64,000 bases of DNA. Source: Macrostomum lignano. Lineage: Eukaryota. The notes beneath the pieces are model-generated. The model made no database searches. It was not told the DNA's origin and worked only from the letters and a program-made list of their open reading frames with translations. The stretch spans positions 62,001 to 126,000 of the forward strand of contig NIVC01001398.1 of the NCBI GenBank assembly GCA_002269645.1, read 5' to 3'. Positions 6,933-37,000 of the stretch are shown one piece after another (position 1 is the stretch's first letter; every line of letters begins with the position of its first letter). The position numbers were made by a program, and so were the translations under genes.

Positions 6933-7172
6933 CGCCCGCCCGCCCAGCAGCCAATTAGAAGCTGGCCCAGAAGGGTTTGCTCGTAAATGCAATTGCTTAA
7001 GGAGTGCACTATAGTTAAATAGCTGGCCCTGAGCGAGGAGGCAAACCTGTGCTGAGCCACTGCAGCTGGAGCTGATGCGAAGAGTTTACTGAAGTGCTGA
7101 ACATGAGAAGTCTCGATGCAGGAACCCAGGAGCAGGTTGTAGGCATTCTCACACACCTTGATGCAGTATGCA
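6933..7172 (-). CDS. Possible additional upstream exon of the K2P gene (240 bp, phase 2-2, open, no Met)
   Basis: ctgcag acceptor at 7173, CG|GTAAG donor at 6933, length divisible by 3, phase matches the acceptor at 5504; peptide not recognised. Confidence 0.3.
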
Positions 7173-7279
7173 CTGCAGGACGTTCAGCAACCCCCCCCCC
7201 CACCTAAATAGCCAGCTGCTTCCGTGGCAAAATGGCATAAGTTTTTTTGGCGGTTGACTTCTTTCAAAAAATCGTTTTT

Positions 7280-18179: not shown

Positions 18180-21162
18180 TCAGTTCGTAAAGATTTCAAT
18201 GTAGCGAGTGCCTGCATCGGAGTTGCGAAGGGGCTAAGTTGTTAGGGGCCGTGAAAGTTTGAGATATTGAATAAAACATTTCAGTTTTTTGGAAGGCTTT
18301 ACATGATGCTTAGGGCGTTTGGGGATAATTAATGGGGATCTAGGGGATTTGAGGATAATTCATGGGGATCTAGGGGATTTGGGGATAATTCATGGGGATC
18401 TAGGGGATTTGGGGATAATTCATGGGGATCTAGGGCATTTGGGAATAATTCATGGGGATCTAGAGCATTTGGGGATAATTGGATCTAGAGCATTTGGAGA
18501 TAATTCATGGGGATCTAGAGCATGTGGGGATAATTCCTGGGGATCTAGGGCATTTGGGAATAATTCATGGGGATCTAGGGAATTCGGGGATAATTCATTG
18601 GAGATCTAGAGCATGTGAGGATAATTTATGGAGATTAAGGGCATTTGGGAATAATTTATGGGGATCTAGGGGATTTGGGAATAATAATTTATGGGATTCG
18701 TGGGAATATAATAGTGGGGATTTAGCTACATGGGGATAAATCATGTGGATCTAAGACACTTGGAAGAATTATGATTAGAAAATTGAGGATAAGTAAAAAG
18801 ATATTAACCAGACACCATGAGCCGCAACTCACCGATAACTTTGCCATTGTACTCGGCAGCCTGGCGGACCTCATCAGCTGACTGAAAGAAAGCATCGGCC
18901 TCGCCGGAGCTCCGACCGCCGGGGTCGCGCCCGATCTGCACCCGGGTGGGCCGCAGCGGCGCGAAGAAGTCGTAGATTTCGGCCTCGCCGGCCGACCAGG
19001 GTAGGCCGCGCAGGTGGACGCGGAAGCCGTCGCCAACGCCCGGGCCGACGCCGCCGCGGTAGCCGCCGGGCTGGTGCATCGGCTGGTGCATCAGCTGGGG
19101 CGGCCCGCCCACGCCAGCTCCGCGCCCGCCGCCGCCGCCGCCGGCCCTGTGCAGGAACAGGTCGACATAGCGGCTGCCCAGGTGCTGCTTGTTCTTTTCC
19201 ATCGCCCGGCGACAGTCGGCTTCCGAATCAAAATCGACGTCGGCCTCGCCGCTTGGCCGGCCGTCCGGGTTGAAGCGAATCTCCACGTGGGCGGCGGTGA
19301 GCGGGGCAAAGAACTGCCGGATGTCCGATTCGCTGGCCGAGTACGGCAGGCCACGCATGTGCACCCAGTAACCCGTGGTCGACGCCCAATCGCTGCCAGG
19401 CGGCCCGCCGCCGCCGCCGCCGCCAAAGTCGCGGCGCATCCCGCCCGGGCCGCCGCCACCGTAGGGACTCGGCCTTGCGCCGCCGTAGCCGCCGGGGCCA
19501 CCGCGGCCGCCGCGCATCGAGCCGCCGCCACTGGCCATAGCGCCAGAATAGTCGCCCATCTGAGGCCCGTAGTCGTAATCGTAGCCGTAGCCACCGCCGT
19601 AGGGTGGCGGCACCGCTGCGCCTCCGGCCGCGTACGGATCGCCTGTGAGAGTGCGATGGGACAAGCAAAAGATGGAGTCTCACTATGAGATAACAGTCCC
19701 GAAATCTCACTATTAGATAACAGTCCCGAAATTTCACAATGAGATAACAGTCCCGACATCTCACTATGAGATAACAGTCCCGACATCTCACTATGAGATA
19801 ACAGTCCCGACATCTCACTATGAGATAACAGTACCGAAATCTCACTATTAGATAACAGTCCCGAAATTTCACAATGAGATAACAGTCCAGAAATCTCACT
19901 ATGAGATAACAGTCCCGAAATTTCACAATGAGATAACAGTCCCGAAATCTCACTATGAGATAACAGTCCCGAAATCTCACTGAGATAACAGTCCCGAAAT
20001 CTCACTTTTAGATAAAAGTCCCGAAATCTCACTATGAGATAACAGTCCCGAAATCTCACTTTGAGATAAGTCTTGAAATTTCAGGTAGCAGGTAGCACAG
20101 GTACAATACGAAAGCATGCCACGGTACAAGTAGCCAGAAAGTCTTCAACGAGTCGCCTAAGAGTCAATTTGAGGCGTTTTATAATATTGTCGGCGACTCT
20201 GGGGCAGTAAAGTCGTATCTGAGGCATACTAGAGTCGCTGTATAGTCAGAGTTGCGTCTAAAGCCCATCTGCTGTATGAATTAGAATCGCATCTCGCAAT
20301 AATAAAAACTCTGTTTAGTCTACTTAAGTTAGTAGAAAGTTAAGCGCTGACTCAAAAGTCGCCTCTCCGTCGCATTTGGGTCGTTAAAAGCTACAAGTGT
20401 CGCTCAAGAGTCGATAGAGTCACTAGTGGGGACAGTGGGGAAGGGCGGGGGGATATTCTAGGCACATCAAATGCGAACAAACGCCTCACCTCCGGACGCC
20501 ATCATCTGCTGCCTATTAGCCTCAGCGTACGCCTCAGCCATAGAGCTGGGGAACAGCTCAATGTAGCGGCTGCCCATATTCTGCCGGTTGCAGCTGCTCA
20601 AAGCACTGCTGGCAGTCTCCGGGGTGTCGAACTGCACGTAGGCCTCGCCGCTAGGCCTGCCGTCCTGGTTGTACACCATCAGGATGCCGTCCTTCACCAC
20701 GTGAAAGCCGTGAAAGAACTCTCTGATGCCGTCGAAATCCGCGGCAAACGGCAGGCCGCGCATCCGCAGCACCGGCTCCCGGTTGTGCCCGCCGTAGGCG
20801 CCGCCGCCGCCGCTGCTGTTCGCTGGCCGGCCAGTGGGTCCGGGGACTCCGGCGCCAGGGACCATGCGAGCTAGCTCGGCCTCGCTGGATTGAAACAGCT
20901 CCACATAGCGCCTGCCCATGTGCTGCTTGTCGTGCCTCATAGCCGCAGCGGCGTCGTCGGGTGTTTCAAAGACGACATAGGCCTCGCCGCTGGGCCGGCC
21001 AAGGTGGTCCTGGGTCAGGTGCACACCCTGCTGGCCCCGGCTGATGCTGCAGTCGTCAAAGAATTTCACAACATCGCTAGCCGTGGATTCGAATGGCAGG
21101 CCGCGCATTCGAACTACACAGGACGGCCCGCCGGACGAATTGTTGGAATTGTTATAGCGCAT
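18180..21162 (-). CDS. HNRNPH: hnRNP F/H (Glorund-like) RNA-binding protein with four qRRMs, 504 aa; exons 21162-20490, 19642-18833, 18211-18180
   Basis: Four RGLP[FYW]..GEA..RY[VI][ED][LI]F modules plus Gly/Tyr-rich linkers. Phase-1 junctions are consistent. The 32-bp last exon (tgcag|GC ACT CGC TAC ATT GAA ATC TTT ACG AAC TGA) completes qRRM4 as GTRYIEIFTN*. Total 1515 nt. Confidence 0.93.
18320..18770. repeat. ~30-bp minisatellite (GGGGATCTAGGGCATTTGGGGATAATTCAT) in hnRNP intron 2
   Basis: Direct reading. Confidence 0.95.
19678..20065. repeat. 27-bp minisatellite (CTCACTATGAGATAACAGTCCCGAAAT) in hnRNP intron 1
   Basis: About 14 tandem units. Confidence 0.96.
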
Positions 21163-22109
21163 GGCTCTGGGGATCTGCTGGCTGAAGTATTTTGTAAGTT
21201 TTTCTATGTACAACTCTTATTTTCAAATACAAAGTTATGTACTTATTATTTCGAAAATGGTTATTGCACTTTATATCTCTAACCTTAAGCTTGCTTAAGC
21301 ATTGTAATTAAATGCTCTAATTTTAATCTTCTGCAATTTAAATAAGTTTTATACAGAAATCATATATCAACAGATAAATGAAAAGTCCTTTTAAAAGAGT
21401 TTATCAAAGAGTCGAACCTACTATGTATCTATGCTATAATGCATAAAAGGTGAAGGTTCCAACTTATAATATAAGTAACCATTTATGGGATGTATACTTT
21501 AAAGAATAGTCTAGTTATTAAGGAAAATTAATTGTTAACTAATCATTTTTAAAAGTAAATAAACAATTCAGTTATTGGTAAAAGTGTTGGCATTAAAACA
21601 AAAAAATCTTAACTTATTAAATTTCTTTGAGTTGACTAAAAGTTAATTAGAATATGCTAATCTATTATCAATAACACAGAATATACAGAAACTTAGCACT
21701 TTCATTTACAAAAACAAACTTTAAAATGCATTGTCTGCATTTTCATTCTTTTGGCTAGCACAGAGAGGTCATTGAAGTAATTTACAATTTATTAAGTAAC
21801 ACATACTAAGAAAAAATATAAATTTGTAATATAACTTATCAAACATATTTTTGTTCTTTCTTGTCTTTGGTCTCATTGACATTTCCATTATCATAAATCA
21901 TACATGCGCAACTGCTGGCCGACCTGGCCGATCCGGCCACCGTAAATCGTGGCTGACCAGGGGTAAGTCGCAAAATTGAGTCAACCAAAAACAGAAAAAC
22001 ACAAGAACCAAGAAAGGCAAGAGGAAAGCGAAAGAAAGAGCAGTTCAGGGAAAATGGTGAAGCAAAAGAAAAACAATTCGCAAAAGAAGCAAACTAAGTT
22101 GTAAAAATA

Positions 22110-22640
22110 ATCAGGTAAGTCGCAAAAAGGATCAGGTAAGTCGCAAAAGGATCAGCTAAGTCGCAAAAAGGATCAGGTAAGTCGCAAAAGGATCAGCTAA
22201 GTCGCAAAAAGGATCAGGTAAGTCGCAAAAGGATCAGCTAAGTCGCAAAAGAAGCAAACTAAGTCGCAAAAAGGATCAGGTAAGTCGCAAAAGGGTTAGG
22301 TAAGTCGCAAAAAGGATTAGGTAAGTCGCAAAAAAAATCAGGTAAGTCGCAAAAAGGATCAGGTAAGTCGCAAAAGGATCAGCTAAGTCGCAAAAGAAGC
22401 AAACTAAGTCGCAAAAAGGATCAGGTAAGTCGCAAAAGGGTTAGGTAAGTCGCAAAAAGGATTAGGTAAGTCGCAAAAAGGATCAGGTAAGTCGCAACAA
22501 GAATCAGGTAAGTCGCAAAAGGATCAGCTAAGTCGCAAAAGGGTTAGGTAAGTCGCAAAAAGGATTAGGTAAGTCGCAAAAAGGATTAGGTAAGTCGCAA
22601 AAAGGATTAGGTAAGTCGCAAAAAGAAGCAACTAAGTCGC
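22110..22640. repeat. ~21-bp tandem array with invariant core TAAGTCGCA inside the TIR element
   Basis: About 25 units; the same core also occurs near both element ends (about 21964, 24099, 24123). Confidence 0.92.
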
Positions 22641-22800
22641 AATAAGAGGGAAGTAAGTCACAATCAGAGGCAATCAGGGGGTAGTAGGTGCAAGTGTGGC
22701 AGGAGAGCAAAAACAGAATAGAAGCCTTCAACCACAGACAAGATCTTTGAAATCAGAAGCCCGCGTCAACAGTTTCCCATTGATTTCTTAAACTCTGGAG

Positions 22801-23050
22801 CAGGGGTTGGCAAACTCCGGCTCGCGAAGCCCCTCTATCTGGCCCTCGCCCTCGGGTTCTTTGAAACTTCCTAACCAGCAAGGTTGGTGTCTCTTCAATT
22901 CTCATCTCTCTCTTCTTCTCTACCTTGCCTCCCCTCTTCTCTCTCTCCCCCCTTTTCCCTCTTCTCTCTCCTCTCATTTTTACTCTCCTCTCTTCTCCCC
23001 CTTTCTCTCTACCCTTTCTCCTCAATGCCCTCTTCTCTCCTCTTATCTTC
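22801..23050 (+). mobile_element. 5' end of a hAT (Charlie-like) non-autonomous element nested in the 9-bp-TSD element
   Basis: Terminus CAGGGGTTGGCAAACT after CTCTGGAG; shares GTTGGTGTCTCTT plus a CT-rich tract with 44174-45152; 3' end not found. Confidence 0.55.
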
Positions 23051-25099
23051 AGCAAAAATATGTGCATATTTTCTTACTTCAAAGTAGAGGGAATAGAAGA
23101 TTAGAGATAAGCAAACAGAGGGGAGGCGAGCGATGCGATGGGAGAAAAGATAGAAGAGGAGAGAAAAGCTGAGGGAGGAAAAAGAGATGAGAGAGAAGAG
23201 GAGATTAGAGGAAAGAGGAAAGAAAAGATGATGGATGAGATCAGAAGAGAGGAAAGAGGAAAGAGGAGAGAGTAGATGAGAGAAGAGAGGATAAAGAGGA
23301 GATGAGAGGAGAGTGAAGAGAGGAGAGATGAGAGAGTAGAAAAGAGAGATAAGATGAGAGAGTAGAGTGGAGAGAGACGAGAGGGAAGATAAGATGAGAG
23401 AGTAGAGTGGAATGGAGAGACGAGAGGAGATAAGAATGTAGAGAGGAGACAGAAGAGATAGGAGAGGAGAGGAAAGAGAGTAGAGAGGAGAGGAAAGAGA
23501 GGAGAGAGGAGAGGAAAGAGAGAAGGGATAAGGGATGAGAGAGAAAAGAAAAAGAGGATGAGAAGATTGAGGAATGAAGAGAATTTGCAAAGGCCTCAAA
23601 TCTTAGTTTAACATGCATTACTCCAATCTTTGCCTTTTTCCTAACTGTTAACAAGTTTTTGTTTGAGCATGACTTCAAATTTAGAATCTATGCAAAAATA
23701 GTTCCGGGAATTAGAATTCAGTGGTTTAAAAATCTGTGGGTTTTCACAGCTTGTATCTCTACTGGATTCGTATTCTGCATCTGATGAGCCATCTGAATCA
23801 GGGCTCTCATCTTCCATGCCAAATCGTCTAGCAAATCGTTCTTGAGCTATAGGTCACACTGTATTCACTTCACTTACTTCTGGACATTCATGAATCATGA
23901 CTTTTGTAGTATGCTCACTACACTGTACTGACAATTTACTAATTGCTTCATGCCGCCACTAGATGACACTGATTAGCTGTTATAAAAACGCGGAATCTGC
24001 ACGCAGCACTAATTAGCTGGTGAGGCATTTAGCTTTAAAAATATAGTCATAGTTACTCCTGCCGTTTACCTAAAGTTTTTGCTTGGCTCTTTCATAGGTA
24101 AGTCGCATTTTTTATCGAAAACTAAGTCGCACGGCCAGCGTAATTTCAGAAGTTGCGCATGTATGATCATAAATGATGAATTTGTTGTTAATTCACAAAT
24201 TATTAATGCAAATTCATTAATCAACAAAAAATCTTAATGACATTTCATTAATGTTAATGAAAATCTAAATTCTTATTAATGGATTGTTACCCAATACTGC
24301 TACCTAGATTGTTATAATATGGTCATGGTTAGGTTAATCATATTATTAGTTGTTTTATATTATAGAGTATGCTATCATAGGATTAGGTTTAGAATTTTAG
24401 TATAGTTATATTTTTTAGAGGATATGTTATAATTCATTATGATATATACAAGTATGATAATTATACAAGTTTTGTAAATAGTTATACAAGTTATTTTAGC
24501 CGAGCTATTTATTATTCATTAAAATAAAAAAGACATTTTTATGAAAAAGTATTTGAGTATAATAAAATAAATAATGCTTTAGATATTTATGATAAAAAAT
24601 ATTGCAAAGTATTTATTTTAGATTATAGTCTACTTTTTTGACATCTAATTATAATTTATAATTTATATACTGAAAATCAACCCTATGATTGGAATAAATT
24701 CTGAAAATGTGTGGATGCCTATCAAGGGTCTAGCAAAAATGCACCAAAAGGTCACTCTAAAGTATATAGACTATATCAATGGATCACCAAGCAGTGGTGG
24801 CACACCAAAAAATAGCATTGTTATGCAGAGCACACCTAATAACTTTGCCAACTTTTGACATTTTGACATTTAGGCCATTCTGACATGGATTCCAAGCACT
24901 ATGCAAGTACCAAGTGTCGCACTGCACTATACCATACTGCACTAAGTGCTACCTTACAGAAAATACGCCACATCTTAGGGTCATTTTAAAAATGTCTAGA
25001 TAGCTATCTGCCATTTAGAAACTTTTTTAATAAGGAAAAGCAAACTAGGATAAGGGCTTCCAAAATGCCAAATTACTAAAAAACATAGGCAGTGAAAAG

Positions 25100-25590
25100 T
25101 TTAGATCCCCTAATATATCCCCTAGACTAAGTCTATCTTTGATTAGGACATTAAAATTTCTAAATTAACAAAGTTTAATAATACAATGTTCTAATAAATA
25201 CAACTTGAGCATACAATGCACTTTGTGACTTTCCAACTACATGTAAAGTCAATCACTATCTATATTTTATTTATCTAAATGATCTAACTATGTACAAACA
25301 TAATTAAAAACACCTAGGCACAAATGAAGACAAAGTTCTATAGCTAGCATGGCATTAGGCCTAGTGATGACCTTTTTGACTTTCATTTCAGCAAGTTCCT
25401 CTAGTAGTGATATCAATTTTACCCAAAGAAATGCTTTGACAATTTCCTATATTAGGTGACCCATTACTATGATATATAGGGTCTAATGCTATTTTTAAGG
25501 CTATAAAACTTTAATTAATAAACTTGTTTCTGTTTGTTTGTTAAAAATCTAGTTTCAAAATAATTTAATGTAGAAAACTAAGACATTGCC
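25100..25590 (+). pseudogene. Hypermutated Merlin (IS1595/IS1016-like) transposase C-terminal remnant with 3' TIR
   Basis: Reads TNIIKNT*AQMKTKFYS*HGI[RP]SDDLFDFHFSKFL***..CFDNFLY*VTHYY, homologous to 29337-29806; TIR-like end ..AACTAAGACATTGCC at 25590. Confidence 0.72.
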
Positions 25591-26389
25591 ACTTTAGTAA
25601 GCCTATTAATTAGTAGATATAAGGTCATTTTGTCTGCTGTTAGGCCTAGTTTGTCTGCTAGCAGACAAAATGACTACTCATTAGTAGGTACATTTATTGT
25701 TTGTTTAGCATGCTGCATGATATTATATAACATTAATATTGATTTATTACAGTTATTCTTTCTCCTATTTTTTCACTGTGAACTCTTATTTTGACTTATA
25801 TGCTAATACTATAAAAAACTATATGAACTTCAAACTTTGTGTGAAATTTCTACCGAAACATACATTCGTTTTAATAAAAGTAGCACTAAATAGTAAAAAA
25901 TAGATGCTTATTAGCAGCAAATATTTTATTGTACACAACACAATAGACAAAAATCTACCTTAGCAATGCTTTGATAGAATGATTAGGCCTACTCTTAATT
26001 TTCAAGTTAAAAAATTCAATTTATAATTATAGAAACTTTAAATGCATAGGCCCAATCTAGGCAAAAAGCATAACATCTAACTACATGCCTATAGCAACTC
26101 ATACTCATTCATGTCAATTATCAAGTCAAGTTACAAATTAGGCCTAATTTAATTGCATTCAATATTCTAAAATTTTCCTAAATCAAACTTAATTAACCTG
26201 TTTTTATGCAGGTCCTTTTTCCTAAGAGCAAAAAACTTCTTCCAAATAGTTGAACCATCATTGCTTCTATGTTGCACCTATTTTTTTTATTAATCTTTAG
26301 CTTTTTTGTTCTCATTTGGCAAGGACCAAGAAGTCAATGACCAGCAACCAGGTTCAAGTTAAGAATAAGATGTTATACCTTATATATTA

Positions 26390-27428
26390 CGAGGGGTGTC
26401 CCAAAAGTTCCCGGAATGTCTAACGTAGCTCTTCAACGGAGCCATGATGTTTCACGCCCTTGGTGTCAAATGAAAGGAAGTTTTGTCACGAAGAAAATGA
26501 AGTTAAAAGCATGTTGATATCTGTTTTTATTCAGGAGCTGCAGCAAGAAACGTGCGCAAAGGTCAAGGGTACTGTTACACAACCTCACATATCACTGAAA
26601 ATAATTTTTCATCTTCGTTTTTAGATATTTTCATTTTGAATTCGTGCTACTAACGTCTCAGAAAGACGTGGTAGTGTCTATGGAAAAAAGCAGAAATGCT
26701 CATTAAGCTAATCTGAGCTTTTGCACGAGTGCAGATAATTCTTACCAAGCGCTTGCTTTCAACTTGAAATCTCTTTGCCAAATTGGGTTCTCTTCAGAGC
26801 CTCGAAAGTCAGCGAAGTCAAGTTTTTGTCCTTTGGTCAATAGGATGGAGTGGGGCCAAGATTTCTGACCACTTATTCTCCATCCATGGTAAGAAAAGCC
26901 TGAAAAAACTGCCATTTACGAATGGATCGAACGCTTTAGAGACGGTCCAGAAAATTCGTAGCCGGTGTTCCAGAACCGCAGTGAACTTGAAGGCTTCACT
27001 CGTCGCGTCATCCTGCATCATGAAATGCCTCGAACTGTTTTTGCCCAGGCCATCGACGGCATGCTTTCAAAGTGGCAGAGGTGTATTCAGCAGAATGGGG
27101 ACTACATGGAGAAGCCGCAGGCTGAGCTTGACGATTCGCTTTGAATTTTGAATCGGTGCATGTCCCAAGGATTCATCAATGGTATGAAATGTTCTGTGTT
27201 TTATTGTTTAAAATCATTGCCATAGATTTTTGAGGTTGTGTAACAGTACCCCTGACCTTTGCGCACGTTTCTTGCTGCAGCTCCTGAATAAAAACAGATA
27301 TCAACATGCTTTTAACTTCATTTTCTTCGTGACAAAACTTCCTTTCATTTGACACCAAGGGCGTGAAACATCATGGCTCCGTTGAAGAGCTACGTTAGAC
27401 ATTCCGGGAACTTTTGGGACACCCCTCG
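26390..27428 (+). mobile_element. Internally deleted mariner element (irritans-like termini) with 198-bp TIRs
   Basis: TA TSD; TIRs 26390-26587 and 27231-27428 with 1 mismatch, starting CGAGGGGTGTCCCAAAAGTT; HTH remnant (SQRSQVFVLWSIG..AIYEWIERFRDG) and C-terminal KWQRCIQQNGDYME; no DDD core. Confidence 0.93.
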
Positions 27429-28418
27429 TATATCTATTTACTAAAAATTATAGACTATAAGCTATTGAAACTCACAGATTTTGAACCCAGGGATTCCAAT
27501 CCCTGGAACTATTTTTGCATATATTCTAAAATCTGAGGCCATACTTAAACAAAAACTTGATAATACTTAGTTTAGTAGGATAGAGGTAAACATAAAATGG
27601 AATACAATTACATAAAATTAGGATTTGAGGCAAGCAGTTGATCTTGTTAGTTGGGGTGCTACACAGTTGGGCAATGTTTATCTAACTTTAAAACATGTAT
27701 TGGCAAACTGTGGCCTCTGCCTCTTCTTTTTCTGACTTGGCAAGTAAAATAAAAAGAAATTCAAAAATCAACATGTGGTTTTTTTGACGCATTTTGCATA
27801 CCAAGGTACATTATCAAGTATATTGTTAGAAACAAAAGGTATGACTATGACTAAGTGAATTTATAAATTTTGGATTTTTATATCCCTTGGATCTTTTGAA
27901 ACTTCTATTTTCTCTTCTGTTTCCTCTTTTCTTTCTTTTGTCTTTTTTTCCTATCTTTTTTCTCTCTAGGCCTACTCTCTCCCTGTTCCACTTTCATCTC
28001 TTGTCTGTTCACTCAAGTCCCTGCTCTCATCTTCCCTCTTTCATCTGTCATCTTTATTGTTTTATATGTTCTATTACCTCTCACCTCTATACTTCTTTTT
28101 TCCCCTCTTTTGACTCTTCACTTTCCTTTTTATTTTATTTTCTTTTCCATTTTCTATAGGCCCTATTCTCTCTCTTATTTCCTCTATTCTCTCTCTACTC
28201 TTTTCCTTTATCTTTTATCTTTCATTTCTCATCTTTCCTTACACCTTTTTAGTTTATAGCCTAGAGAATGAAGTCAATGAAAAATTGTGCATTTTGAGCA
28301 GAAATTTTAAGGTAGCCTATGAGTATGACATTTTCTATAGTTAATTTAAGGTGGGTGCAAAATTTGGTGTAATATGGTTGAGCCATGTGGGAGTCCATAG
28401 CAAAGTAATTTGTATACA

Positions 28419-28421
<3 letters not shown>

Positions 28422-28456
<35 letters not shown>
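28422..28456. repeat. (CA)n microsatellite
   Basis: Direct reading. Confidence 0.97.
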
Positions 28457-28457
<1 letters not shown>

Positions 28458-29336
28458 CATTTATTTGCAGCAACCAGGTTCAAGTAGGCCTAAGAATAAG
28501 ATATTATACCTTTATTTATACATTATATATTATATATAGACTATACCCTATCCCTATAGTCAATGATAGACATAGTAATTAATTTTAAATATCATTTATT
28601 TGTTAATTGCAATTCAGCTAGCTAAAAGCCAAAGTAGCCAAAATTGGATCCAGTATTATCTGAGCAGTTGAAAAAAGTAGGGCCTACTGATTCACTGATT
28701 TATCATTAGGGCCTAGTGCACTGTAAATGTAAATCAACTAAGTAAATGAAGGCCTATGCAACAAAAGTAACATTTTTCCTTCACAAAAACGCAAATGGCT
28801 GCGTCTTACTAATAGTAAGTTCTAACATTAACAGTAACAGCCATATAACTTCTTTGTAATCTATTGTTTGCGTTTATAAAAGTTTTATCTAGTCTCAGCG
28901 ACGATATATAAATTACAAATCGACGAATTAACAAACCCGTTACCCAAATTTGCACTTTTCCAAGACTTATCTGTGAATTTTTTAGACTTATTAATTATTG
29001 CATTAGCCATTTCTGAATTTGAGTCACCTAGCAGTGATATAAATTTTGTAGTTATTATAATTACTTTTTTAAGTTTTGTTTAAATTACAAAAAAATTCAA
29101 CGAAATGGATCTCCTAATTTAAATCCAACAAACAGCAAATTCTTCCTCGAAAGGCAAATTTTTCTTGCATGAGCAGAAGAGTGACTACAGAAGTCCCTTA
29201 AAAGTTCTATGGCATTGTTTCTATCATTTAAATGTTATAAAAAACAAAATCAAATCGTCATTTAAATACAGACGACGTAGACACAGCTTTTCTAAATTAG
29301 TTTTTGCAATTTATTAATTAATATATTTGATGTATG

Positions 29337-29806
29337 GGCATTGTCCTAGTTACCCGCGTTAAATTATTATTTTGACCCAAAATTTGAAACGAACAAACAA
29401 AACAAAAGCAAGTTTATTCAAGATTTTAAATGAGTCTTAGGTATTAAAAGGAGTAGTACACGGCGTAGTAATGTGTCAGCCAGTACAGAAAGTTGCCGAA
29501 GCTCTTTTTGGGTAGGCCTAGGCCCTTAGAGTCAGCGCCAGAGAAAATTGCTAAAGTGAGAGTCAAAAAGGTCGTCATTGGTGCCATGCTGACTACAAAA
29601 CTTCACCTTCACGTGGGCCCAGGTGCCTTCAATGGTGTTCTCAATGACTGATTCCAAGGTCACAGAGGTCAGCCAATGGCTGAATGGCCGCAAATTGGCA
29701 GGAGGTAGGATATTTACAGGCGCTCGAGGTTGTCCCGCCATGATTTACACTGAAAATAAAGAAGATTGGGTCAAAATAATTTAATGGGGGAAAGTAGGAA
29801 CTTGCC
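29337..29806 (-). mobile_element. Internally deleted Merlin-family DNA transposon (470 bp)
   Basis: Imperfect ~44-bp TIRs starting GGCA; 8-bp TSD GATGTATG/AATGTATG; ORF from 29741 fuses an N-terminus to the Merlin-type C-terminal motif NTIEGTWAHVKVKFCSQHGTNDDLFDSHFSNFLWR. Confidence 0.8.
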
Positions 29807-30216
29807 AATGTATGTATGCCTATGTATCCTATATAGATCTGGACCTAGGATTCTAGATGGACATTGATTAATTCAATTAAATGTTTTATTTTTTGTAAAA
29901 TAGAAACTGATTTTTCTGCTATTAACTTAACAATTAATAAACATTTGCTGGTTTAAGTAGAAAGATACCAATATAGCATAAAACATTTAATTTATATATA
30001 ATTATATAGCAATATGCCTATATGCTATATCTTATAAATTATTGAACTAAGGATAGTGAATAAGGTGTAAGTAGGAATTAAAGCTTAGCCATAATCTTTT
30101 TATTGAATTTCTGTAATATTATATTTTTAAAACTTTGATATTATTATATTAGGCCATTAGGGGCCTACTTTTCAATATATAATATCAATGATCCCACGAC
30201 TTCCAGTATTATATTT

Positions 30217-30455
30217 GGCGCATGACTAAGACTACCATACACTAAGACTACCACAGCTATTACTGGCTACTAGTATTGAGGGGGAACTACCAATCTTCTA
30301 GCATTGCTATTCTTTTCATAGGTTCTTTTCTTGCTCCTGGCTCTCCTACCCACTAATCTCCTCTCTAGCACCATCTAATAACATATAAATTCAAATTTCT
30401 CCATTAGTTCCCCAAGTGTGGCGGTTTTGGTGTGTGGCAGTCTTGGTCCTACACC
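30217..30455. mobile_element. MITE with 40-bp imperfect TIRs and 8-bp TSD
   Basis: 30217-30256 is the reverse complement of 30416-30455 at 29 of 40 positions; flanks TTATATTT and TTATATTC. Confidence 0.7.
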
Positions 30456-33400
30456 TTATATTCTGCATATAAAAAAGAAAATTTAACAAAAAGTTGATTT
30501 TTTTGCAAATAAACATTGCATTAAACATTGCAAAATAATTACAAAAGATAAAAAAAATCTTTAACAAAAAAATTTGGCCTTAACTATATTAAATAAATAG
30601 CAAAACATCTTTTGTAAGCCTTACTAACAATGTATTAGTTAGTTTCTAGCATTAAATTATTTTGACATTAATTTTTAACAAATAAACCAAAACAAGTTTA
30701 TTAAAGCATACTTAAGATATATATAATCAATATTAATAAGTCTTTAAACTGTAGAGATCTTAAAAAAGCAACATTAAATAATATAGTGATAAATGATAGG
30801 TCATTTTGGTCATCTAATATCAAAAGTTGCCAAAGTATTTCTATAGGTAGAGTTGGCACTAGGGTCTATAAGAATTTTTGCTAAGATAAAGTGTGCTCTT
30901 TTTAAGTTGCCATTGATCTTTGTATGCAGAGTGATCTGACTAGTAGATGTCAGGGGTCTCGCTGCTCCAAGAAGATAGGCCCTTATGTGTAGACAATCTA
31001 GTTGCAGATGAATGACTAGCGTAGCTCTCTAAACTTGCAAGCTACAGCTGCATTGCATAGTCAGTTGTACTAGTTGTTAATATTTGCTAAAAATGCAATG
31101 TAGAATCCACATGAATTTTCCATGTAGAATTAATATCAAATTTGTCACAGCAATTACATGTGGAATCTATGTAGAAAATCCATCTGGAATTGATATTGAA
31201 TTTGTCCTAGTGATTCCATGTGGAGACCATATAGACTTTTCTACCTGAAATCAGGCTTCATTTTGCAGATTGAGCTGAATGCTATCCAGGTATGCCTAAA
31301 TGTTTAATTCAAAATAAGCTTTAAATTGAAGTCAACTATCTTGATCTTTACATTAGAAAATGATGCTAGCCAAGTCTGTATATATTGAAATGTAAGATAA
31401 GTAGCAGCCTTAAATTAATTTAAATCATTTGTGATACAAAATACATTTAGGGTGTTTTAAAATTAAAATATAATATACAATACAATATAAAAGATCTTCA
31501 AGGCACTCAATAAAGGCCAACATTTCTGGGTCTTAGTTGTGTAGTTCCTTCCATTTTCGTTGGACTTCTCCTAGAGCATGCAGTCTAACAGACGATTGAC
31601 ATAGGCTTTTATGTGCTTCAGTAGTCTCACTTTCAAGTATGCGCAGTGAACAGATCTAAAAAATACCAAATGCAATATTAGGAAAATTATTGCAAGATAC
31701 TTAAGATTAACTTCAAGTTTGATTGTTGCATTTGTTAGCATATTTAAATTAATAGGCAAATATATAATTGAACATAATTAAATAGGCCAAAATGTGTGTA
31801 ACAGGGGTGTTTCCTGTACACTGAGAATCCCACTGCTGAGACACCAAAAGCTGTAACAGGGGGGGATTCTTCCTTCTTAATAATATCCCACTGCTGGTAC
31901 CAAAAGCTGTCCCAGGGCTCTTAATTATTCTCTTTCTAGTCTTACTTGCTGCTACTAAGTTGTCAAAGTGGTGTTCCTGTACAATACAAAATCCCACCAA
32001 TTAGCCACCAAGCTGTTACAGGGCTAATTTACTAATCTCTTAAGTGTTCTTCTTAGGTTGGTAGCTGCCACCAAGATTATTCTATTAATAAATTATGAGT
32101 TTATCAATATTAGAATAATCTGAGAAAAGTTTCTTAGAATAGGTCTGATTATTTAGTCTGAGTATTATTCTTAGAAAAACTGTTAGCCCTGAAAGATTTT
32201 ACTCTTCTGATTATTCTGGTAGCGTTCTATTTAATAATAACCTAAGCAGTATTTTGGCTTACTGGTATATGTATTTCATGTACTTTGCAAGTCCTTGGGC
32301 GTTACCGAGATCAGAGGGTCACAGCCTCCGTTATTCTTACACGTATTACTTCAGATCTACTTCACAACTTCTTACTACTCAACACTTTCCTTCTCAGTAG
32401 TATATATGGTACACACTTCCATCTACTTCACTCTTTCTTAAAAAAAGGAATTAACACAGAAAACACTTCTTCAATTCTTATTTTCTCGGAACTCTTACTA
32501 TTCGTTATCAATTGCTTATTGTGGAACCGCAATGCGCAAGGTTGGTCTCTCCTCTGCCAAAAACGCTTCTATTTATACTAAAATTTGCTACAGTTTTAAA
32601 CAAAAATTCGTTAGTGCAAAATTTTATAGAAAATACAAGTATTAAAACAAAATATGTTTCTTAGTTTTGGCGTGAATTCAAATTGACTAAACGGGAGGGG
32701 CCCTGCACATGTGCATTTGCCAGATGTGCTAAAAGCCATGGCTTTTTTACTTGAACAAGGCCTATTTCTTATTTAGTTTTAGATCTTAGGCTAATAAACT
32801 GCAATGAAAAAGAAATAAAAATCATATACCATATAAATATTCCTTATAAAAAAACATACAAATATCTAAAAACTAATTTACACAATAAAAATTTAGAAAA
32901 AGTGCAATACCTAGGCTAGTCTTCATATTTGGCAAATCTTCTATTACAAGTTGCAATTTTGAATTTTCACTTTAAGAAAAATTATTAAATTTATATAGTC
33001 TACTTTTAAATGAAATTTAAGATAATTCTTATTGCTATGACTCATTAGCAAAATTATAAAAAAATAATTTTGCAATAGGCCTATGTCCTTGTTTTATTGA
33101 ATTACAGGCCTACACTTAGGGTAAAGACAGAGTAAAAAATAGAATAAACTTGGGAAAAGATGCAATTTAATGAGACAAAGCAAGAATGGATAAGCATGTA
33201 TTTTTTAAGAGTCATTCATCAATTTTATAAATCACTTATTAAATGTAACTTTGTTTGACGTTACATAGCTAGCTATAGCAGAAGATTCTTGTAGGGCATG
33301 CTAGGCCTACAAACAAATAACTGAAGGCCTAATGATAGATTAGTAAGGACAATTGACTTATCATTTGAATAAATATAATGATTTAAGATTTAAGTATTAC

Positions 33401-34097
33401 AAAGTTTATATATCAAAGAATGAGATTTTTGTCCACATTTAATATTTGTCCACAATAAGATAACAATTAAGGACCCTGAAACCAACTTTTGATTCAAGTA
33501 CTTACAAGGAAAGACACATAACACACATGTTAACAAAAATTTTATTCACATCCTTCACCTTAAATAGAAAATAAAAAAACAATAAAACTCCAAGTGTCAT
33601 CCAAGATTCTTGATGCTACCAAGAATTGCTTTAGTATGGTAGCCCACTCTGTCCAATGCTTGCTGATAGTGTGGGGGTCTGCACTGATGCTGAATAGTAA
33701 CTAAAAAGAAAAAAACAAACAACAAACAAATTTAATAGGTTGAAGGTAGAATTGTACAGTTGTAATAAATCATCAGAAACTAACTCTGTATATCCTATGA
33801 ATCGAATCACATTCACAGTGACTACTATGACTGATGCAATGACTAACTAAAACGAATTAATAATTTTTTAATTTCTAGAGTCTGATATAATTATTAACTT
33901 CAAAAGAAATAAAATTATGGGAAAATGTTTCTTTAGCTTAAAAGTTACAAATTTTACAAGTTGCAAGTGAGATAAGTGAGCAATGAACTTTGGAAAATGC
34001 AGGGGTTAACAATTCAACTGTCGCAAATGCCATTCTGCAGGCCAAAGTGCAGACCCATGTTGCCAATGGCGGCATCAAACTGGCCTCGCAGACAGCC

Positions 34098-37000
34098 ATG
34101 ACTGCCCCGGCCACATCGTTGCCTGCCTCTGCCGCTGCGGACAGCTGGGGCAGCGCCGCCCGGGAGGCCACGGTCTCTGCCGCGGCGCCAGACGGCTGCC
34201 TGCAGCTCAGCCTGACTGGCGGGGCCGAAAATGGCCAGCTGTGCGCATTGGCCGACATCCGACCGGACCAGTGCGTCTTCTGGCAGGGCCGGGCCGAGTC
34301 TGGCGACATCCTGCTAGAGGTTCAAGGCCACCGGGTCAGCGGGTTCACTCTGCGCGACGCTCGCGAACTTCTCGCCGCCCTGTCTGCCAACGGCGCGCCT
34401 GTGGTGCTGAAGACGCTGCCAGCAGGCCGACTGTCGCCGGATCTAGCCAGGCTGCTGCGCTCGCAGTTCGATGCTGGCAGCCCCGAAGCCGCACTGCAGT
34501 CGGTGGTGCGCGACAACCTGTACCTGCGCACCGTGCCGGTGACCACCCGGGCCAGGCGGGAGAATGAAATCGACGGCGTCGACTACGCTTTTATTGGGGC
34601 CGACGAGTTCGACCGGCTGGAGCGGGCCGGCCGGCTGCTTGAGAGCGGCGTGTTCGAGGGCAATCGCTACGGCACGCCGCGGCCGGCGCCCGAGGCTACC
34701 GGCCTGTTCCGCCGCACTGCCGACGGCGGCGTCGCTGCTGACTCGGCGGCGTCGGCATCGACGAGCAAAGCGGGCTCGCCGAGCCGCAAAGTCAACGCCG
34801 TGCAACCGCAGCCGAGGTCGGAGACGCTGCCAACTGGCAAGGCGGCCAGTCCGGAGGCTGCAGCTGCCGATGCCGCATCAACGGATGAGTCGCCTCTGCC
34901 TGCTGGTTGGGAGCGAGTTGTGGATCCCAAATATGGCGTGTTCTATATTGAGTGAGTTCAGGGGAGGGGGTGGATAGCTTTTGATCAGGGTGTAATTATT
35001 GTGTTGGGGACTGGATATACTAAACTGATTGGGGACTTGGTGACTGGATATACTATACTAAATAGCGGAGAATGTGCTGGATAGCGGAGAATATCTGGAA
35101 AGCAGAGAATGAGCTGGAAAGCAGAGAATGTGCTGGAAAGCGGAGAATATACTAAATAGCGGAGAATATGCTGGATAGCGGAGAATGTGCTGGATAGCGG
35201 AGAATATCTGGAAAGCAGAGAATGAGCTGGAAAGCAGAGAATGTGCTGGAAAGCGGAGAATATACTAAATAGCGGAGAATATGCTGGATAGCGGAGAATG
35301 TGCTGGATAGCGGAGAATGTGCTGGATAGCGGAGAATTTACTGGAAAGCGGAGAATGTGCTGGATAGCGGAGAATGTGCTGGATAGCGGAGAATGTGCTG
35401 GATAGCGGAGAATGTGCTGGATAGCGGAGAATGTGCTGGATAGCGGAGAATGTGCTGGATAGCGGAGAATATGCTGGATAGCGGAGAATATGCTGGATAG
35501 CGGAGAATGTGCTGGATAGCGGAGAATGTGCTGGATAGCGGAGAATATGCTGGATAGCGGAGAATGTGCTGGATAGCGGAGAATGTGCTGGATAGCGGAG
35601 AATGTGCTGGATAGCGGAGAATGTGCTGGATAGCGGAGAATGTGCTGGATAGCGGAGAATATGCTGGATAGCGGAGAATGTGCTGGATAGCGGAGAATGT
35701 GCTGGATAGCGGAGAATATGCTGGATAGCGGAGAATGTGCTGGATAGCGGAGAATGTGCTGGATAGCGGAGAATGTGCTGGATAGCGGAGAATGTGCTGG
35801 ATAGCGGAGAATGTGCTGGATAGCGGAGAATGTGCTGGATAGCGGAGAATGTGCTGGATAGCGGAGAATATGCTGGATAGCGGAGAATGTGCTGGATAGC
35901 GGAGAATGTGCTGGATAGCGGAGAATATGCTGGATAGCGGAGAATGTGCTGGATAGCGGAGAATGTGCTGGATAGCGGAGAATTTACTGGAAAGCGGAGA
36001 ATGTGCTGGATAGCGGAGAATGTGCTGAATAGCAAAGTATGTACTGGATAGCCTAGAATTTACTGGAAAGCAGAGAATGTGCTGGATAGCGGAGAATGTG
36101 CTGGATAGCGGAGAATGTGCTGGATAGCGGAGAATGTGCTGGATAGCGGAGAATTTACTGGAAAGCGGAGAATGTGCTGGATAGCGGAGAATGTGCTGGA
36201 TAGCGGAGAATGTGCTGGATAGCGGAGAATATGCTGGATAGCGGAGAATGTGCTGGATAGCGGAGAATGTGCTGGATAGCGGAGAATGTGCTGGATAGCG
36301 GAGAATGTGCTGGATAGCGGAGAATGTGCTGGATAGCGGAGAATGTGCTGGATAGCGGAGAATGTGCTGGATAGCGGAGAATATGCTGGATAGCGGAGAA
36401 TGTGCTGGATAGCGGAGAATGTGCTGGATAGCGGAGAATATGCTGGATAGCGGAGAATGTGCTGGATAGCGGAGAATATGCTGGATAGCGGAGAATGTGC
36501 TGGATAGCGGAGAATGTGCTGGATAGCGGAGAATGTGCTGGATAGCGGAGAATGTGCTGGATAGCGGAGAATGTGCTGGATAGCGGAGAATGTGCTGGAT
36601 AGCGGAGAATGTGCTGGATAGCGGAGAATATGCTGGATAGCGGAGAATGTGCTGGATAGCGGAGAATGTGCTGGATAGCGGAGAATATGCTGGATAGCGG
36701 AGAATGTGCTGGATAGCGGAGAATGTGCTGGATAGCGGAGAATGTGCTGGATAGCGGAGAATGTGCTGGATAGTGGAGATTGTGCTGGTTAAGCTAGATC
36801 GTAGATATCGGAGCTTCTAAGAATTTTAATATTTACGAAAGATCGCTCTGAGCAAAAACGTTTCTTTATTTTTGAAAGCACTGTATTGTGCACCTGAAAT
36901 CCAGTGCTAAGGAAATTGCTATTTACTTTGTTGCGACACCATTGCAAAGTGTCCATAATTTAGTTCGCTCGCTATCTATTTACACCGTGGCGGTATTTTG

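What the first reader, a model, noticed from the sequence alone, without database searches (positions are those of the whole stretch)
24900..30460. RIP-like, CpA/CpG-directed C>T hypermutation of old transposons in an animal genome
Seen in the sequence, in two independent comparisons. (a) The two TIRs of the MITE at 30217-30455 differ at 11 of 40 positions. Nine are transitions, and 8 of those are at CpA/TpG or CpG; none is at the many CpC sites. (b) In the Merlin copy at 25100-25590, compared with its better-preserved relative at 29337-29806, all three Trp codons have become TAG (25315, 25402, 25453; TpG>TpA) and none TGA. CAG has become TAG (25345), TGT has become TAT, and GAC has become GAT before G (CpG). 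The whole 21.3-33.9 kb block looks CpG-poor and TpA/CTAG-rich, while the young mariner inside it keeps its CpGs. Established: CpA>TpA conversion of repeats is the hallmark of fungal RIP, whereas ordinary animal 5mC decay targets CpG. Inference: a repeat-directed non-CpG methylation or deamination defence system may act in this lineage.
Basis: partly seen in the sequence, partly recalled or inferred. Interest (0 to 1): 0.85.

Follow-up and report, generated by a model that had tools for sequence, protein, structure and literature searches.

The report
Flatworm spacer decay, not RIP
The C-to-T changes seen in old transposon copies are real, but they come from an ordinary, region-wide mutation bias (hot spots at CpG and at CAG) in an AT-rich gap between two genes of the flatworm Macrostomum lignano, and not from a fungal-style defence that targets repeats.

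Summary
The window is Macrostomum lignano (assembly Mlig_3_7, contig NIVC01001398.1). The region 21.3-33.9 kb is the AT-rich spacer between a divergent hnRNP-F/H gene and a MAGI gene. It holds three decayed Merlin/IS1595 remnants, an 8-bp-TSD MITE and a young mariner.

Pooled paralogue comparisons show only CpG decay at the dinucleotide level (CpA 0.32, CpC 0.24, CpT 0.27, CpG 0.67 per site).

A ~96%-identical homeologous contig gave a far larger sample. It shows a real context bias in the spacer: CpG 19-22%, CAG 20-22%, other CpA 9%, CpT 6%, CpC 4%. A second, polarised locus repeats it (CAG>TAG 3.6% against 0.5%). A third locus does not.

The bias is identical in TE remnants and in the rest of the spacer. 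It is absent from GC-rich genic DNA, and it occurs at ordinary divergence (4%). CpA is not depleted, and the mariner's 200-bp matching arm portions differ at one base. So the bias is regional, not repeat-directed, and not RIP.

The likeliest cause, which is inferred, is 5mC deamination by the retained DNMT1/DNMT3 with some CAG side activity.

Unexplained extra: TAGGCCTA micro-palindromes inserted at TA sites, about 1 per kb of AT-rich DNA.

The parts
21300..33900 (.). AT-rich (GC 0.31-0.34) intergenic spacer between divergently transcribed genes
   Evidence: Composition profile. hnRNP-F/H exons lie at 18804-21213 (-) and the first MAGI-like exon at 33990-34955 (+) (Pfam RRM_1, Guanylate_kin, PDZ). 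CpG o/e 0.31-0.45, TpA o/e 0.87-0.93, (CpA+TpG)/(ApC+GpT) 1.26.
25100..25625 (+). Merlin/IS1595-type transposon remnant, copy A (heavily decayed, GC 0.28, no CpG left)
   Evidence: Aligns to copy B at 71% identity over 292 nt. It reads through the conserved ...NTIEGxWA..K.KF...HGT.D.LFD.H...FLWR...YW..HYY C-terminus with stops.
25315..25317 (+). TAG replacing the invariant Trp (TGG) of the transposase; CCAG>CTAG on the other strand
   Evidence: The mutated cytosine is in CAG context.
25345..25347 (+). TAG where copy B has CAG
25402..25404 (+). TAG replacing the Trp of the FLWR motif
25453..25455 (+). TAG replacing the Trp of the (L/F)YW motif; shared with copy C
25356..25363 (.). TAGGCCTA micro-palindrome: a 6-bp insertion at a TA inside Merlin copy A
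   Evidence: It adds two codons to the HGT(S/N)D-LFD spacing that is conserved in all 11 homologues. It is present in the homeologue too.
26388..27430 (.). Young internally deleted mariner-like element with 221-bp inverted arms and a TA TSD
   Evidence: Arms are 96% identical overall, and over their matching 200 bp they differ at 1 base. The homeologous contig has the empty site with a single TA. The C-terminal remnant resembles the SETMAR/Hsmar1 transposase (E = 0.037). CpG o/e 0.85.
29334..29809 (-). Merlin/IS1595-type element, copy B (better preserved; internally deleted)
   Evidence: 35-nt TIRs start with GG (I13). The 8-bp TSD is GATGTATG/AATGTATG (read). The 69-aa ORF at 29535-29741(-) hits proteins that carry Pfam DDE_Tnp_IS1595.
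29513..29520 (.). TAGGCCTA motif inside copy B; the region carries an 8-bp insertion with a frameshift relative to copy A, and the 6-bp unit TAGGCC is absent from the homeologue
30217..30455 (.). MITE with 40-nt TIRs (29/40 identical) and an 8-bp TSD
   Evidence: The right TIR is deleted in the homeologue.
30600..30860 (-). Merlin remnant, copy C (92% identical to copy A over 84 nt in the local alignment; 82% over 94 nt by BLAST)
27967..27974 (.). TAGGCCTA motif that is a clean 6-bp gain at a TA relative to the homeologue
28467..28552 (+). Paralogue of 26342-26389 plus 27432-27465; it carries a TAGGCCTA (28485) as a 5-bp insertion relative to its paralogue
27456..27570 (-). Unclassified repeat, paralogue of 23641-23755 (80-82% identical)

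Best explanation
What it is: the AT-rich intergenic spacer between two head-to-head genes of the free-living flatworm Macrostomum lignano. It is filled with old cut-and-paste transposon debris (three Merlin/IS1595 remnants and a MITE) and one recent mariner.

Shown:
- The sequence is decaying neutrally under a strong GC>AT bias. The spacer's GC of about 0.31-0.34 equals the equilibrium predicted from the C>T and T>C rates seen in the window's minisatellites.
- The cytosine mutation spectrum depends on context: CpG ~ CAG > other CpA > CpT > CpC, with a 5' G being protective.
- This spectrum applies to the whole spacer, whether transposon-derived or not. It operates at ordinary rates and is not seen in the GC-rich genic DNA next door.
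- Nothing indicates recognition of repeats or bursts of mutation.

Inferred: the hot spots most likely reflect deamination of 5-methylcytosine. This species retains DNMT1 and DNMT3. They would methylate some intergenic spacers in the germ line or stem cells at CpG, with the DNMT3-type side activity on CAG. T:G mismatches outside CpG would be poorly repaired.
For: Species and homeologue: a 98%-identical hnRNP protein is annotated in M. lignano. L003 is 100% identical to the window, and L002 is a homeologous contig.

Old paralogues pooled: CpA 0.32, CpC 0.24, CpT 0.27, CpG 0.67 transitions per site. CpA against CpC+CpT gives OR 1.36, p = 0.35. CpG gives OR 6.3, p = 3e-4.

Homeologue comparison of the spacer (248 substitutions):
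- CpA 10.3%, CpT 6.2%, CpC 3.5%, CpG 22% (OR 2.0, p = 1e-4).
- By +2 base: CAG 20%, CAT 13.6%, CAC 12.4%, CAA 3.6%, CTG 12.6%.

Independent triple locus L004/5/6, polarised by majority, AT-rich part:
- C>T at CAG 7/193, against 10/1923 for other non-CpG cytosines.
- TAG>CAG only 2/278.
- CGN 2.9%.

Merlin A against B: CAG 5/7 against 24/91. Across the four datasets the Mantel-Haenszel OR is 3.45 and the combined p is 2.5e-7.

Not repeat-specific: TE remnants against the rest give divergence 4.2% against 3.9%, CAG 4/18 against 14/63, and YpA 9.5% against 10.7%.

Absent from GC-rich DNA: CAG 9/607 against 98/4679, and no CWG effect in the GC part of L004-6.

CpG and CAG mutability rise and fall together between loci: window 19% and 22%, L007/8 4.9% and 2.0%.

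GC>AT bias in minisatellite variants: C>T 0.35-0.55 per site against T>C 0.14-0.20 per site.

Literature: M. lignano retains DNMT1 and DNMT3 and has low 5mC, and the genomic pattern is unknown (PMC11292947, PMC9246332, PMC10658182). The asymmetry CAG > CTG (7 against 1; 5/7 against 1/7) matches what I recall of DNMT3-type mCAG (my own knowledge, not tested here).
Against: - The methylation step is entirely inferred. No methylation data were available.
- One of three loci (L007/L008, AT part) shows no CAG effect (2/99 against 2.9%).
- The homeologue comparisons are unpolarised. The three-way polarisation is imperfect: an apparent TpG>CpG rate of 1.4% probably reflects CpG>TpG on internal branches.
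- If CAG>TAG had long run at the CpG rate, the CAG/TAG ratio (0.54) should be far lower than the CAA/TAA ratio (0.68). It is only slightly lower, while CGN/TGN is 0.19. So the hot spot is either weaker or more recent than the point estimates suggest.
- The 'rest of the spacer' may itself be unrecognised ancient repeat. The TE against non-TE contrast is therefore not a clean repeat against unique contrast.
- The -1/-2 preference (C or A favoured, G disfavoured) is not the TA-CAG motif I recall for mammalian DNMT3B.
Confidence: 0.6

Rival explanations
1. RIP-like, homology-directed defence. Duplicated sequences are recognised and their cytosines are mutated in bursts, mainly at CpA, by a RID-like methylase or a deaminase.
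For: - The context ranking CpA > CpT > CpC matches the ranking of fungal RIP.
- The most decayed copies drift towards the RIPCAL thresholds. [quoted passage not shown]
- C>T and G>A counts are balanced in A against B (21 and 19).
Against: - TE remnants and the rest of the spacer have the same rate and spectrum.
- Homeologue divergence is an ordinary 4%.
- The spacer index of 1.26 and the copy indices of >=1.03 are what relaxation towards context-free equilibrium (1.0) gives. They are far from true RIP values of 0.27-0.74 with TpA/ApT of 1.65-2.7 (PMC2621366).
- CpG is at least as mutable as CpA here. In RIP, as I recall it, CpG ranks below CpA and CpT.
- The mariner's matching 200-bp arm portions differ at one base, which is in CpT context.
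- A and C share derived states.
Confidence: 0.04
2. A methylation-independent regional context effect. Cytosines next to weak or flexible steps (CpA/TpG) in AT-rich, easily melted, probably late-replicating or heterochromatic DNA would deaminate or be miscopied more often. GC-flanked cytosines (GC, CC) would be protected.
For: - The effect is confined to AT-rich DNA.
- A 5' G and a 3' C are protective (GCC 1.2%, GCT 1.0%, CCC 0%), as expected from local duplex stability.
- No methylation data are needed.
Against: - It does not explain why +2 G (CAG, CTG) promotes change while +2 A (CAA 3.6%) protects. Local AT richness predicts the opposite.
- It does not explain why CpG, the most stable step, is the other hot spot.
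- It does not explain why the CpG and CAG effects vary together between equally AT-rich loci.
Confidence: 0.22
3. No special process beyond CpG decay and AT-biased drift. On this view the CpA and CAG signal is ascertainment by the reader plus sampling noise and locus heterogeneity.
For: - Pooled old-paralogue data show no CpA excess.
- One of three homeologous loci shows none.
- The trinucleotide contrast was found by exploring the data. It was not specified beforehand.
Against: CAG excess appears in three datasets that share no substitutions:
- window/L002, p = 1.5e-5.
- L004-6, p = 4e-4, with direction CAG>TAG 7 against 2.
- Merlin A/B, p = 0.02.

The combined p is 2.5e-7, which easily survives correction for 16 trinucleotide classes.
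Confidence: 0.12

Closest known systems
Fungal repeat-induced point mutation (RIP; RID/Dim-2 dependent)
   Same: C:G>T:A transitions with a neighbour ranking CpA > CpT > CpC. Nonsense codons (TAG) are created in transposase reading frames. The affected DNA is AT-rich.
   Different: There is no dependence on duplication and no bursts. CpA is not depleted (index 1.26; RIP gives 0.27-0.74). CpG is as hot as CAG. The +2 base matters. The young inverted duplication is untouched. The organism is an animal with canonical DNMT1/3.
5-methylcytosine deamination decay of CpG in methylated animal DNA
   Same: CpG transitions are 3-6 fold above other contexts and CpG o/e is 0.26-0.41 in the spacer. The young mariner still has its CpGs. 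DNMT1 and DNMT3 are present in the species (literature).
   Different: The depleted, fast-decaying compartment here is intergenic, TE-rich DNA. In most invertebrates, gene bodies are the usual methylation target. A non-CpG context (CAG) decays as fast as CpG.
DNMT3-type non-CpG methylation (mCAG in mammalian pluripotent cells, mCAC in neurons)
   Same: CpA is preferred over CpT and CpC. There is a +2 G preference with strand asymmetry (CAG > CTG). The effect co-varies with the CpG effect between loci.
   Different: It is known from vertebrate somatic or pluripotent cells. It is not known as a germ-line mutational signature in an invertebrate. Methylation was not measured here, and the upstream-base preference differs from the one I recall.
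AID/APOBEC editing of retroelements in vertebrate genomes
   Same: C>T or G>A changes with a sequence-context preference that pile up in mobile elements.
   Different: There is no strand asymmetry (21 C>T against 19 G>A). The preferred -1 base is C or A, which fits neither TC (APOBEC3A/B) nor WRC (AID). The elements here are DNA transposons and non-TE spacer, not reverse-transcribed elements.

Membership tests
RIP (repeat-induced point mutation) | Mutation is confined to duplicated sequence (homology-dependent) | tested here: not met
   TE remnants against the rest of the spacer: divergence 4.2% against 3.9%, CAG 4/18 against 14/63, YpA 9.5% against 10.7%. Caveat: the rest may contain unrecognised old repeats.
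RIP (repeat-induced point mutation) | CpA>TpA dominance that leaves CpA/TpG depleted and TpA in excess (TpA/ApT >=0.89 and (CpA+TpG)/(ApC+GpT) <=1.03; true cases about 1.7-2.7 and 0.27-0.74) | tested here: not met
   Spacer 1.02 and 1.26; Merlin A 1.18 and 1.04; MITE 1.44 and 1.03; CpA+TpG o/e 1.04-1.12. Thresholds and fungal values come from PMC2621366.
RIP (repeat-induced point mutation) | Hypermutation: many transitions introduced into a fresh duplicate | tested here: not met
   The mariner arms have 1 difference in their 200 matching bp. Spacer divergence is no higher than neutral expectation.
RIP (repeat-induced point mutation) | A RID/Dim-2-type cytosine methyltransferase homologue in the genome | not tested
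The literature reports only canonical DNMT1, DNMT2 and DNMT3 (PMC11292947, PMC9246332, PMC3710501).
5mC-driven CpG decay | Excess CpG>TpG/CpA transitions and low CpG o/e in older sequence | tested here: met
   CpG against CpC+CpT: OR 6.3, OR 5.1 and OR 5.7 polarised. CpG o/e is 0.31 in the spacer against 0.85 in the young mariner.
5mC-driven CpG decay | The region is actually methylated in the germ line | not testable with these tools
   No methylation data. The literature says only that 5mC is low and DNMT1/3 are present in the species.
DNMT3-type non-CpG (CAG) methylation footprint | C>T excess at CAG over other CpH, asymmetric with respect to CTG, in the same regions as the CpG excess | tested here: inconclusive
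   Met in window/L002 (22% against 6.7%), in L004-6 (3.6% against 0.5%; CAG 7 against CTG 1) and in Merlin A/B (5/7). Not met in L007/8 (2.0% against 2.9%), where the CpG effect is also weak.
Merlin (IS1595/ISXO2-like) DNA transposons | DDE_Tnp_IS1595 transposase | tested here: met
   The ORF at 29535-29741(-) hits 12 proteins at E<=1e-3. Seven of the 8 scanned match PF12762, and 6 of those clear the curated cut-off. W41, K45, K47 and G53 are invariant. The fragment itself is too short for Pfam.
Merlin (IS1595/ISXO2-like) DNA transposons | TIRs beginning with GG and an 8-9 bp target-site duplication | tested here: met
   Copy B: TIRs GGGCATTG... and GGCAAGTT..., TSD GATGTATG/AATGTATG. The defining values are from my recollection of the family description.
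Tc1/mariner | TA target-site duplication, TIRs and a mariner transposase | tested here: met
   TA flanks both ends, and the homeologue has the empty site with one TA. The arms are 221 bp long. The transposase is only a remnant, with a weak match to SETMAR (E = 0.037).
AID/APOBEC editing | Strand-asymmetric, clustered C>T (or G>A) in a TC, CC or WRC motif | tested here: not met
   21 C>T against 19 G>A in A/B. The -1 base is C or A, with G disfavoured and T neutral. Clustering was not examined.

The most novel reading that the evidence does not exclude
Macrostomum lignano may direct cytosine methylation at CpG and at CAG to particular AT-rich, transposon-laden intergenic spacers in its germ line or neoblasts. 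The resulting deamination would erode and inactivate whatever lands there. That would be a region-targeted animal counterpart of the fungal methylation and mutation defences (MIP/RIP). It would also be a driver of this genome's sharp split between AT-rich spacers and GC-rich genes.
Probability: 0.15. Interest if true: 0.7.

Novelty: new variant of a known kind. Interest (0 to 1): 0.33.

Why it matters
As proposed (RIP in an animal), the finding would have been remarkable, but the evidence does not support it.

What remains is smaller but testable. A free-living flatworm whose methylome pattern is still undescribed shows, in some intergenic spacers, a mutational footprint with CpG and CAG equally hot and gene regions spared.

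If methylation data confirm mCG plus mCAG on these spacers, three things would follow:
- The footprint would give a first view of what DNMT1/DNMT3 target in flatworms.
- It would be an invertebrate case of heritable non-CpG methylation.
- It could explain why this genome alternates between 32% GC spacers and 50-58% GC genes.

The TAGGCCTA micro-insertions may separately record very heavy past activity of an unseen TA-inserting transposon, or an undescribed insertion process.

Tried and rejected
- Pfam on the Merlin and mariner fragments gave no hits because the fragments are too short. Family identity was obtained indirectly through homologues.
- An exact look-up and a homology search with the copia ORF, meant to reach more copies from the same genome, found nothing on record and a best hit of 52% identity.
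- The first species search with one hnRNP exon failed because of the tool's length filter. A concatenated two-exon query succeeded.
- Two metagenome scans, one for the mariner TIR and one for a dispersed minisatellite, gave nothing and one chance bacterial hit.
- The mariner arms carry too few differences to serve as a mutation-spectrum source.
- A block-wide RIP signature was rejected on dinucleotide o/e values and RIP indices.
- CTAG enrichment was rejected against Markov expectations.
- No parent transposon with TA|GG...CC|TA termini was found in the window or in about 190 kb of fetched M. lignano DNA.
- The Tc1-like fold-back at 12358-13068 has CC...GG ends, the wrong polarity for the footprint.
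- A literature search for the TAGGCCTA motif returned only primers and unrelated uses.
- The Wasik et al. 2015 genome paper (PMC4603488) is not held in the library.

Full report
**Setting**

The window has GC-rich genes (45-58% GC) whose introns are full of 17-46-bp minisatellites. These genes flank a 12.6-kb block of 31-34% GC at 21.3-33.9 kb.
- ORFs on the left encode a K2P channel, a copia-type retrotransposon and a four-RRM hnRNP-F/H protein on the minus strand.
- ORFs on the right encode a MAGI-like protein (guanylate-kinase and PDZ domains) on the plus strand, an ABC1 kinase and Ig-domain proteins.
- The block is therefore the spacer between two divergently transcribed genes.

A query made from the two hnRNP exons found a 98%-identical protein annotated in Macrostomum lignano.
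- Fetching its cluster partner returned DNA 100% identical to the window: contig NIVC01001398.1 of assembly GCA_002269645.1.
- Fetching the protein itself returned a homeologous contig, NIVC01002222.1 (locus L002). It aligns to window 19.7-31.8 kb with about 96% identity at aligned sites, plus indels and one 2.3-kb rearrangement.

**The elements**
- Copy B (29334-29809, minus strand) has 35-nt TIRs beginning with GG and an 8-bp TSD. It also has a 69-codon ORF whose 12 database relatives align as ...HTNTVEGxWA..K.KF..MHGTSD.LFDSHLQEFLWR...W..HYY. Seven of the eight relatives scanned match Pfam DDE_Tnp_IS1595. So 'Merlin' is right.
- Copy A (25100-25625, plus strand) is 71% identical to B.
- A third remnant, copy C (30600-30860), is closest to A: 92% over 84 nt in the local alignment and 82% over 94 nt by BLAST.
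- The MITE at 30217-30455 has 40-nt TIRs and a 7/8-matching 8-bp TSD.
- The mariner (26388-27430) is an internally deleted element with 221-bp inverted arms, TA flanks and a weak SETMAR-like C-terminal remnant. The homeologue has the empty site with a single TA, so the insertion is younger than the homeologue split.

**Checking the observation**

Every base-level statement holds.
- The TIRs differ at 11 of 40 positions: 9 transitions, of which 5 are at CpA/TpG, 3 at CpG and 1 at CpT.
- In copy A, TAG stands at 25315, 25402 and 25453 where B and the protein family have Trp. TAG also stands at 25345 where B has CAG.
- The block is CpG-poor (o/e 0.45, or 0.31 without the mariner). The mariner is not (0.85).

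Two claims are overstated.
- TpA o/e is 0.87-0.93, which is below 1.
- CTAG is not enriched once di- or trinucleotide content is allowed for: 43 observed against 34 +/- 5.7 or 47.

**Is it more than chance? First pass**
- The TIR contrast alone (8/13 CpA or CpG sites hit, against 1/10 others) gives p = 0.03.
- The whole A-B alignment, with B taken as proxy ancestor, gives C>T at CpA 11/41, CpC 6/25, CpT 13/34 and CpG 10/17.
- Five paralogue comparisons pooled give CpA 0.32, CpC 0.24, CpT 0.27 and CpG 0.67 per site. CpA against CpC+CpT has OR 1.36 (p = 0.35). CpG has OR 6.3 (p = 3e-4).
- Variants in 23 minisatellite arrays, polarised against each array's consensus, show a strong GC>AT bias: C>T 0.35-0.55 per site against T>C 0.14-0.20. 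They show no CpA preference.

**Second pass with the homeologue**

The spacer alignment to L002 gives 248 substitutions at 4% divergence, so saturation is negligible.
- Transitions per cytosine site, with the context taken from the C-bearing allele and identical neighbours required, are CpA 10.3% (76/740), CpT 6.2%, CpC 3.5% and CpG 22%. CpA against CpC+CpT has OR 2.0, p = 1e-4.
- The +2 base matters: CAG 20%, CAT 13.6%, CAC 12.4% and CAA 3.6%; CTG 12.6% against 4-7% for the other CTN contexts.
- A 5' G is protective: GCC 1.2% and GCT 1.0%.
- These counts are unpolarised. T-site abundance still cannot explain them, because TAA sites outnumber TAG sites while YAA differences are the rarest.

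**Replication and direction**

Three paralogous M. lignano contigs around another hnRNP gene (L004, L005, L006; about 98% pairwise identity) allow polarisation by majority.
- In their AT-rich upstream part, C>T occurs at CAG 7/193 (3.6%), at other non-CpG cytosines 10/1923 (0.5%) and at CGN 2.9%.
- The reverse change TAG>CAG is 2/278.
- In their GC-rich genic part there is no CAG or CpA effect, and only a weak CpG effect.
- Going back to Merlin A against B with trinucleotides, CAG is hit 5/7 times against 24/91 (p = 0.02).
- A further homeologous pair (L007/L008) does not show the effect (2/99 against 2.9%).
- Across the four datasets the Mantel-Haenszel OR is 3.45 and the combined p is 2.5e-7.
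- In L007/L008 the CpG effect is also weak (4.9% against 19% in the window) and CpG o/e is higher (0.55-0.60 against 0.41). The two hot spots therefore vary together between loci.

**Is it repeat-directed or RIP-like?**

No, on every test available here.
- Within the spacer, annotated TE remnants (1.6 kb aligned) and the remainder (4.4 kb) have the same divergence (4.2% against 3.9%). They also have the same spectrum: YpA 9.5% against 10.7%, and CAG 4/18 against 14/63.
- Divergence is ordinary: 3.8-4% in the spacer and about 3% in the neighbouring GC-rich part.
[quoted passage not shown] That is simply relaxation towards 1.0. The RIPCAL paper uses <=1.03 as its threshold and reports 0.27-0.74, with TpA/ApT of 1.65-2.7, for true RIP.
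- CpA/TpG o/e stays above 1.
- The mariner's matching 200-bp arm portions differ at one base.
- Copies A and C share derived T states, including a TAG. The TAGs in A are also present in the homeologue, so they are old and probably partly inherited.
- C>T and G>A are balanced (21 against 19). The -1 base preference fits neither the TC nor the WRC motif, which argues against APOBEC/AID-type editing.

**Mechanism**

Shown: a regional, context-dependent spectrum with CpG ~ CAG > other CpA > CpT > CpC, operating at neutral rates in AT-rich spacers.

The spacer's GC (0.31-0.34) matches the equilibrium of about 0.30 predicted by the C>T to T>C ratio in minisatellites. The spacer therefore looks like DNA at mutational equilibrium.

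Inferred: the two hot spots reflect 5mC deamination.
- M. lignano, unlike planarians and parasitic flatworms, retains DNMT1 and DNMT3 and has low 5mC. The genomic pattern has not been described (PMC11292947, PMC9246332, PMC10658182).
- CAG is the classic side target of DNMT3-type enzymes, with CAG favoured over CTG. This rests on my own knowledge.
- The co-variation of the CpG and CAG effects between loci fits locus-specific methylation.

Against this inference:
- No methylation was measured, and one locus fails to replicate.
- The CAG/TAG ratio (0.54) is only slightly below the CAA/TAA ratio (0.68), whereas CGN/TGN is 0.19. A long-standing CpG-strength hot spot at CAG is therefore unlikely.

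The main rival is a methylation-independent effect of AT-rich, easily melted DNA. That rival does not explain the +2 G preference or the CpG hot spot.

**Side finding**

The palindrome TAG(2-4)C(2-4)TA, mostly TAGGCCTA, occurs 13 times in the spacer and nowhere else in the 64 kb. The expected count is 0.2-1.6.
- It occurs 6-13 times (9-13 in all but L008) per roughly 10 kb of AT-rich DNA in each of the window and six further M. lignano loci, and never in a GC-rich part.
- Wherever a comparison exists it is an insertion:
  - +6 bp in Merlin A, breaking the conserved HGTSD-LFD spacing;
  - +8 bp with a frameshift in Merlin B;
  - +5 bp relative to a paralogue;
  - between homeologues, clean +6 gains at a TA (window 27966, and two in L007), a +8 TAGGCCCC at a TA, a +8 at an AT, and one tandem duplication.
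- Flanks show a weak palindromic A-N-[TA]-N-T pattern.
- The structure, TA plus 4-6 G/C bases plus TA, is what a Tc1/mariner-type excision footprint looks like. No element with matching GG...CC termini was found in about 190 kb.
- The motif contributes TA and CTAG to the block and interrupts both Merlin reading frames.

**Verdict**

The 'RIP-like, repeat-directed hypermutation' reading is not supported. A modest, real and testable residue remains: a CAG/CpG-centred regional mutation bias, possibly a methylation footprint. Interest is about 0.33.

Noticed in passing
window 25356, 25641, 25984, 26139, 27967, 28157, 28485, 28678, 28707, 29513, 30158, 33076, 33302; also L002, L004-L008: TAG(2-4)C(2-4)TA micro-palindromes (mostly TAGGCCTA) occur at about 1 per kb in AT-rich spacers only, 10-50 fold above expectation. 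Wherever a paralogue or homeologue allows comparison, they are 5-8 bp insertions, usually +6 at a TA. They look like transposon excision footprints, but no parent element was found.
   Followed up: partly
window 21899-24176 versus L002 101-2540: A 2.3-kb segment holding the 21-bp minisatellite and a GA-rich stretch lies next to the hnRNP gene in the window. In the homeologous contig it lies at the far end of the spacer, so the two copies differ by a rearrangement.
   Followed up: no
window ~26068 (350-bp insertion at L002 ~7098-7434): The homeologue carries a 350-bp insertion flanked by a roughly 12-bp direct repeat (CATAACATCTAA). It is possibly a short retroposon or another TE insertion polymorphism.
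   Followed up: no
window 12358-13068: A Tc1-like fold-back derivative. It has two nested, nearly perfect inverted arm pairs (82 nt at 100% and 62 nt at 98%) around an ORF with a Sleeping-Beauty-type HTH. Its architecture (long perfect arms, deleted core) matches that of the mariner at 26388-27430.
   Followed up: partly
window 7277-7967 and 15918-16609; many arrays throughout 1-21 kb and 34-64 kb: Introns are packed with 17-46-bp minisatellites, and one 23-bp unit (GGATTTGGGGCGATTCTCCAGGT) recurs at two separate sites. Genes are 45-58% GC while the spacers are 31-34% GC, close to the mutational equilibrium. Something other than mutation bias must therefore keep genic DNA GC-rich.
   Followed up: partly
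window-L002 alignment, spacer: Most short indels between the homeologues are exact tandem duplications of 4-8 bp, for example TATAG, AAGAT, TTAGT, ATTATAT and CCCTAT. Replication slippage is therefore the dominant indel process here.
   Followed up: no
L004/L005/L006 three-way alignment: The three paralogous contigs are roughly equidistant overall (97.9-98.2%). Locally, however, L004-L005 reach 98.8% while L006 is at 95.5-96%. This mosaic suggests gene conversion or mixed allelic and homeologous relationships in this partly duplicated genome.
   Followed up: no
window 8365-11787: A copia-type LTR retrotransposon has long open gag-integrase (701 aa) and RT/RNase H (402 aa) frames. The closest database relative is only 52% identical.
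   Followed up: partly
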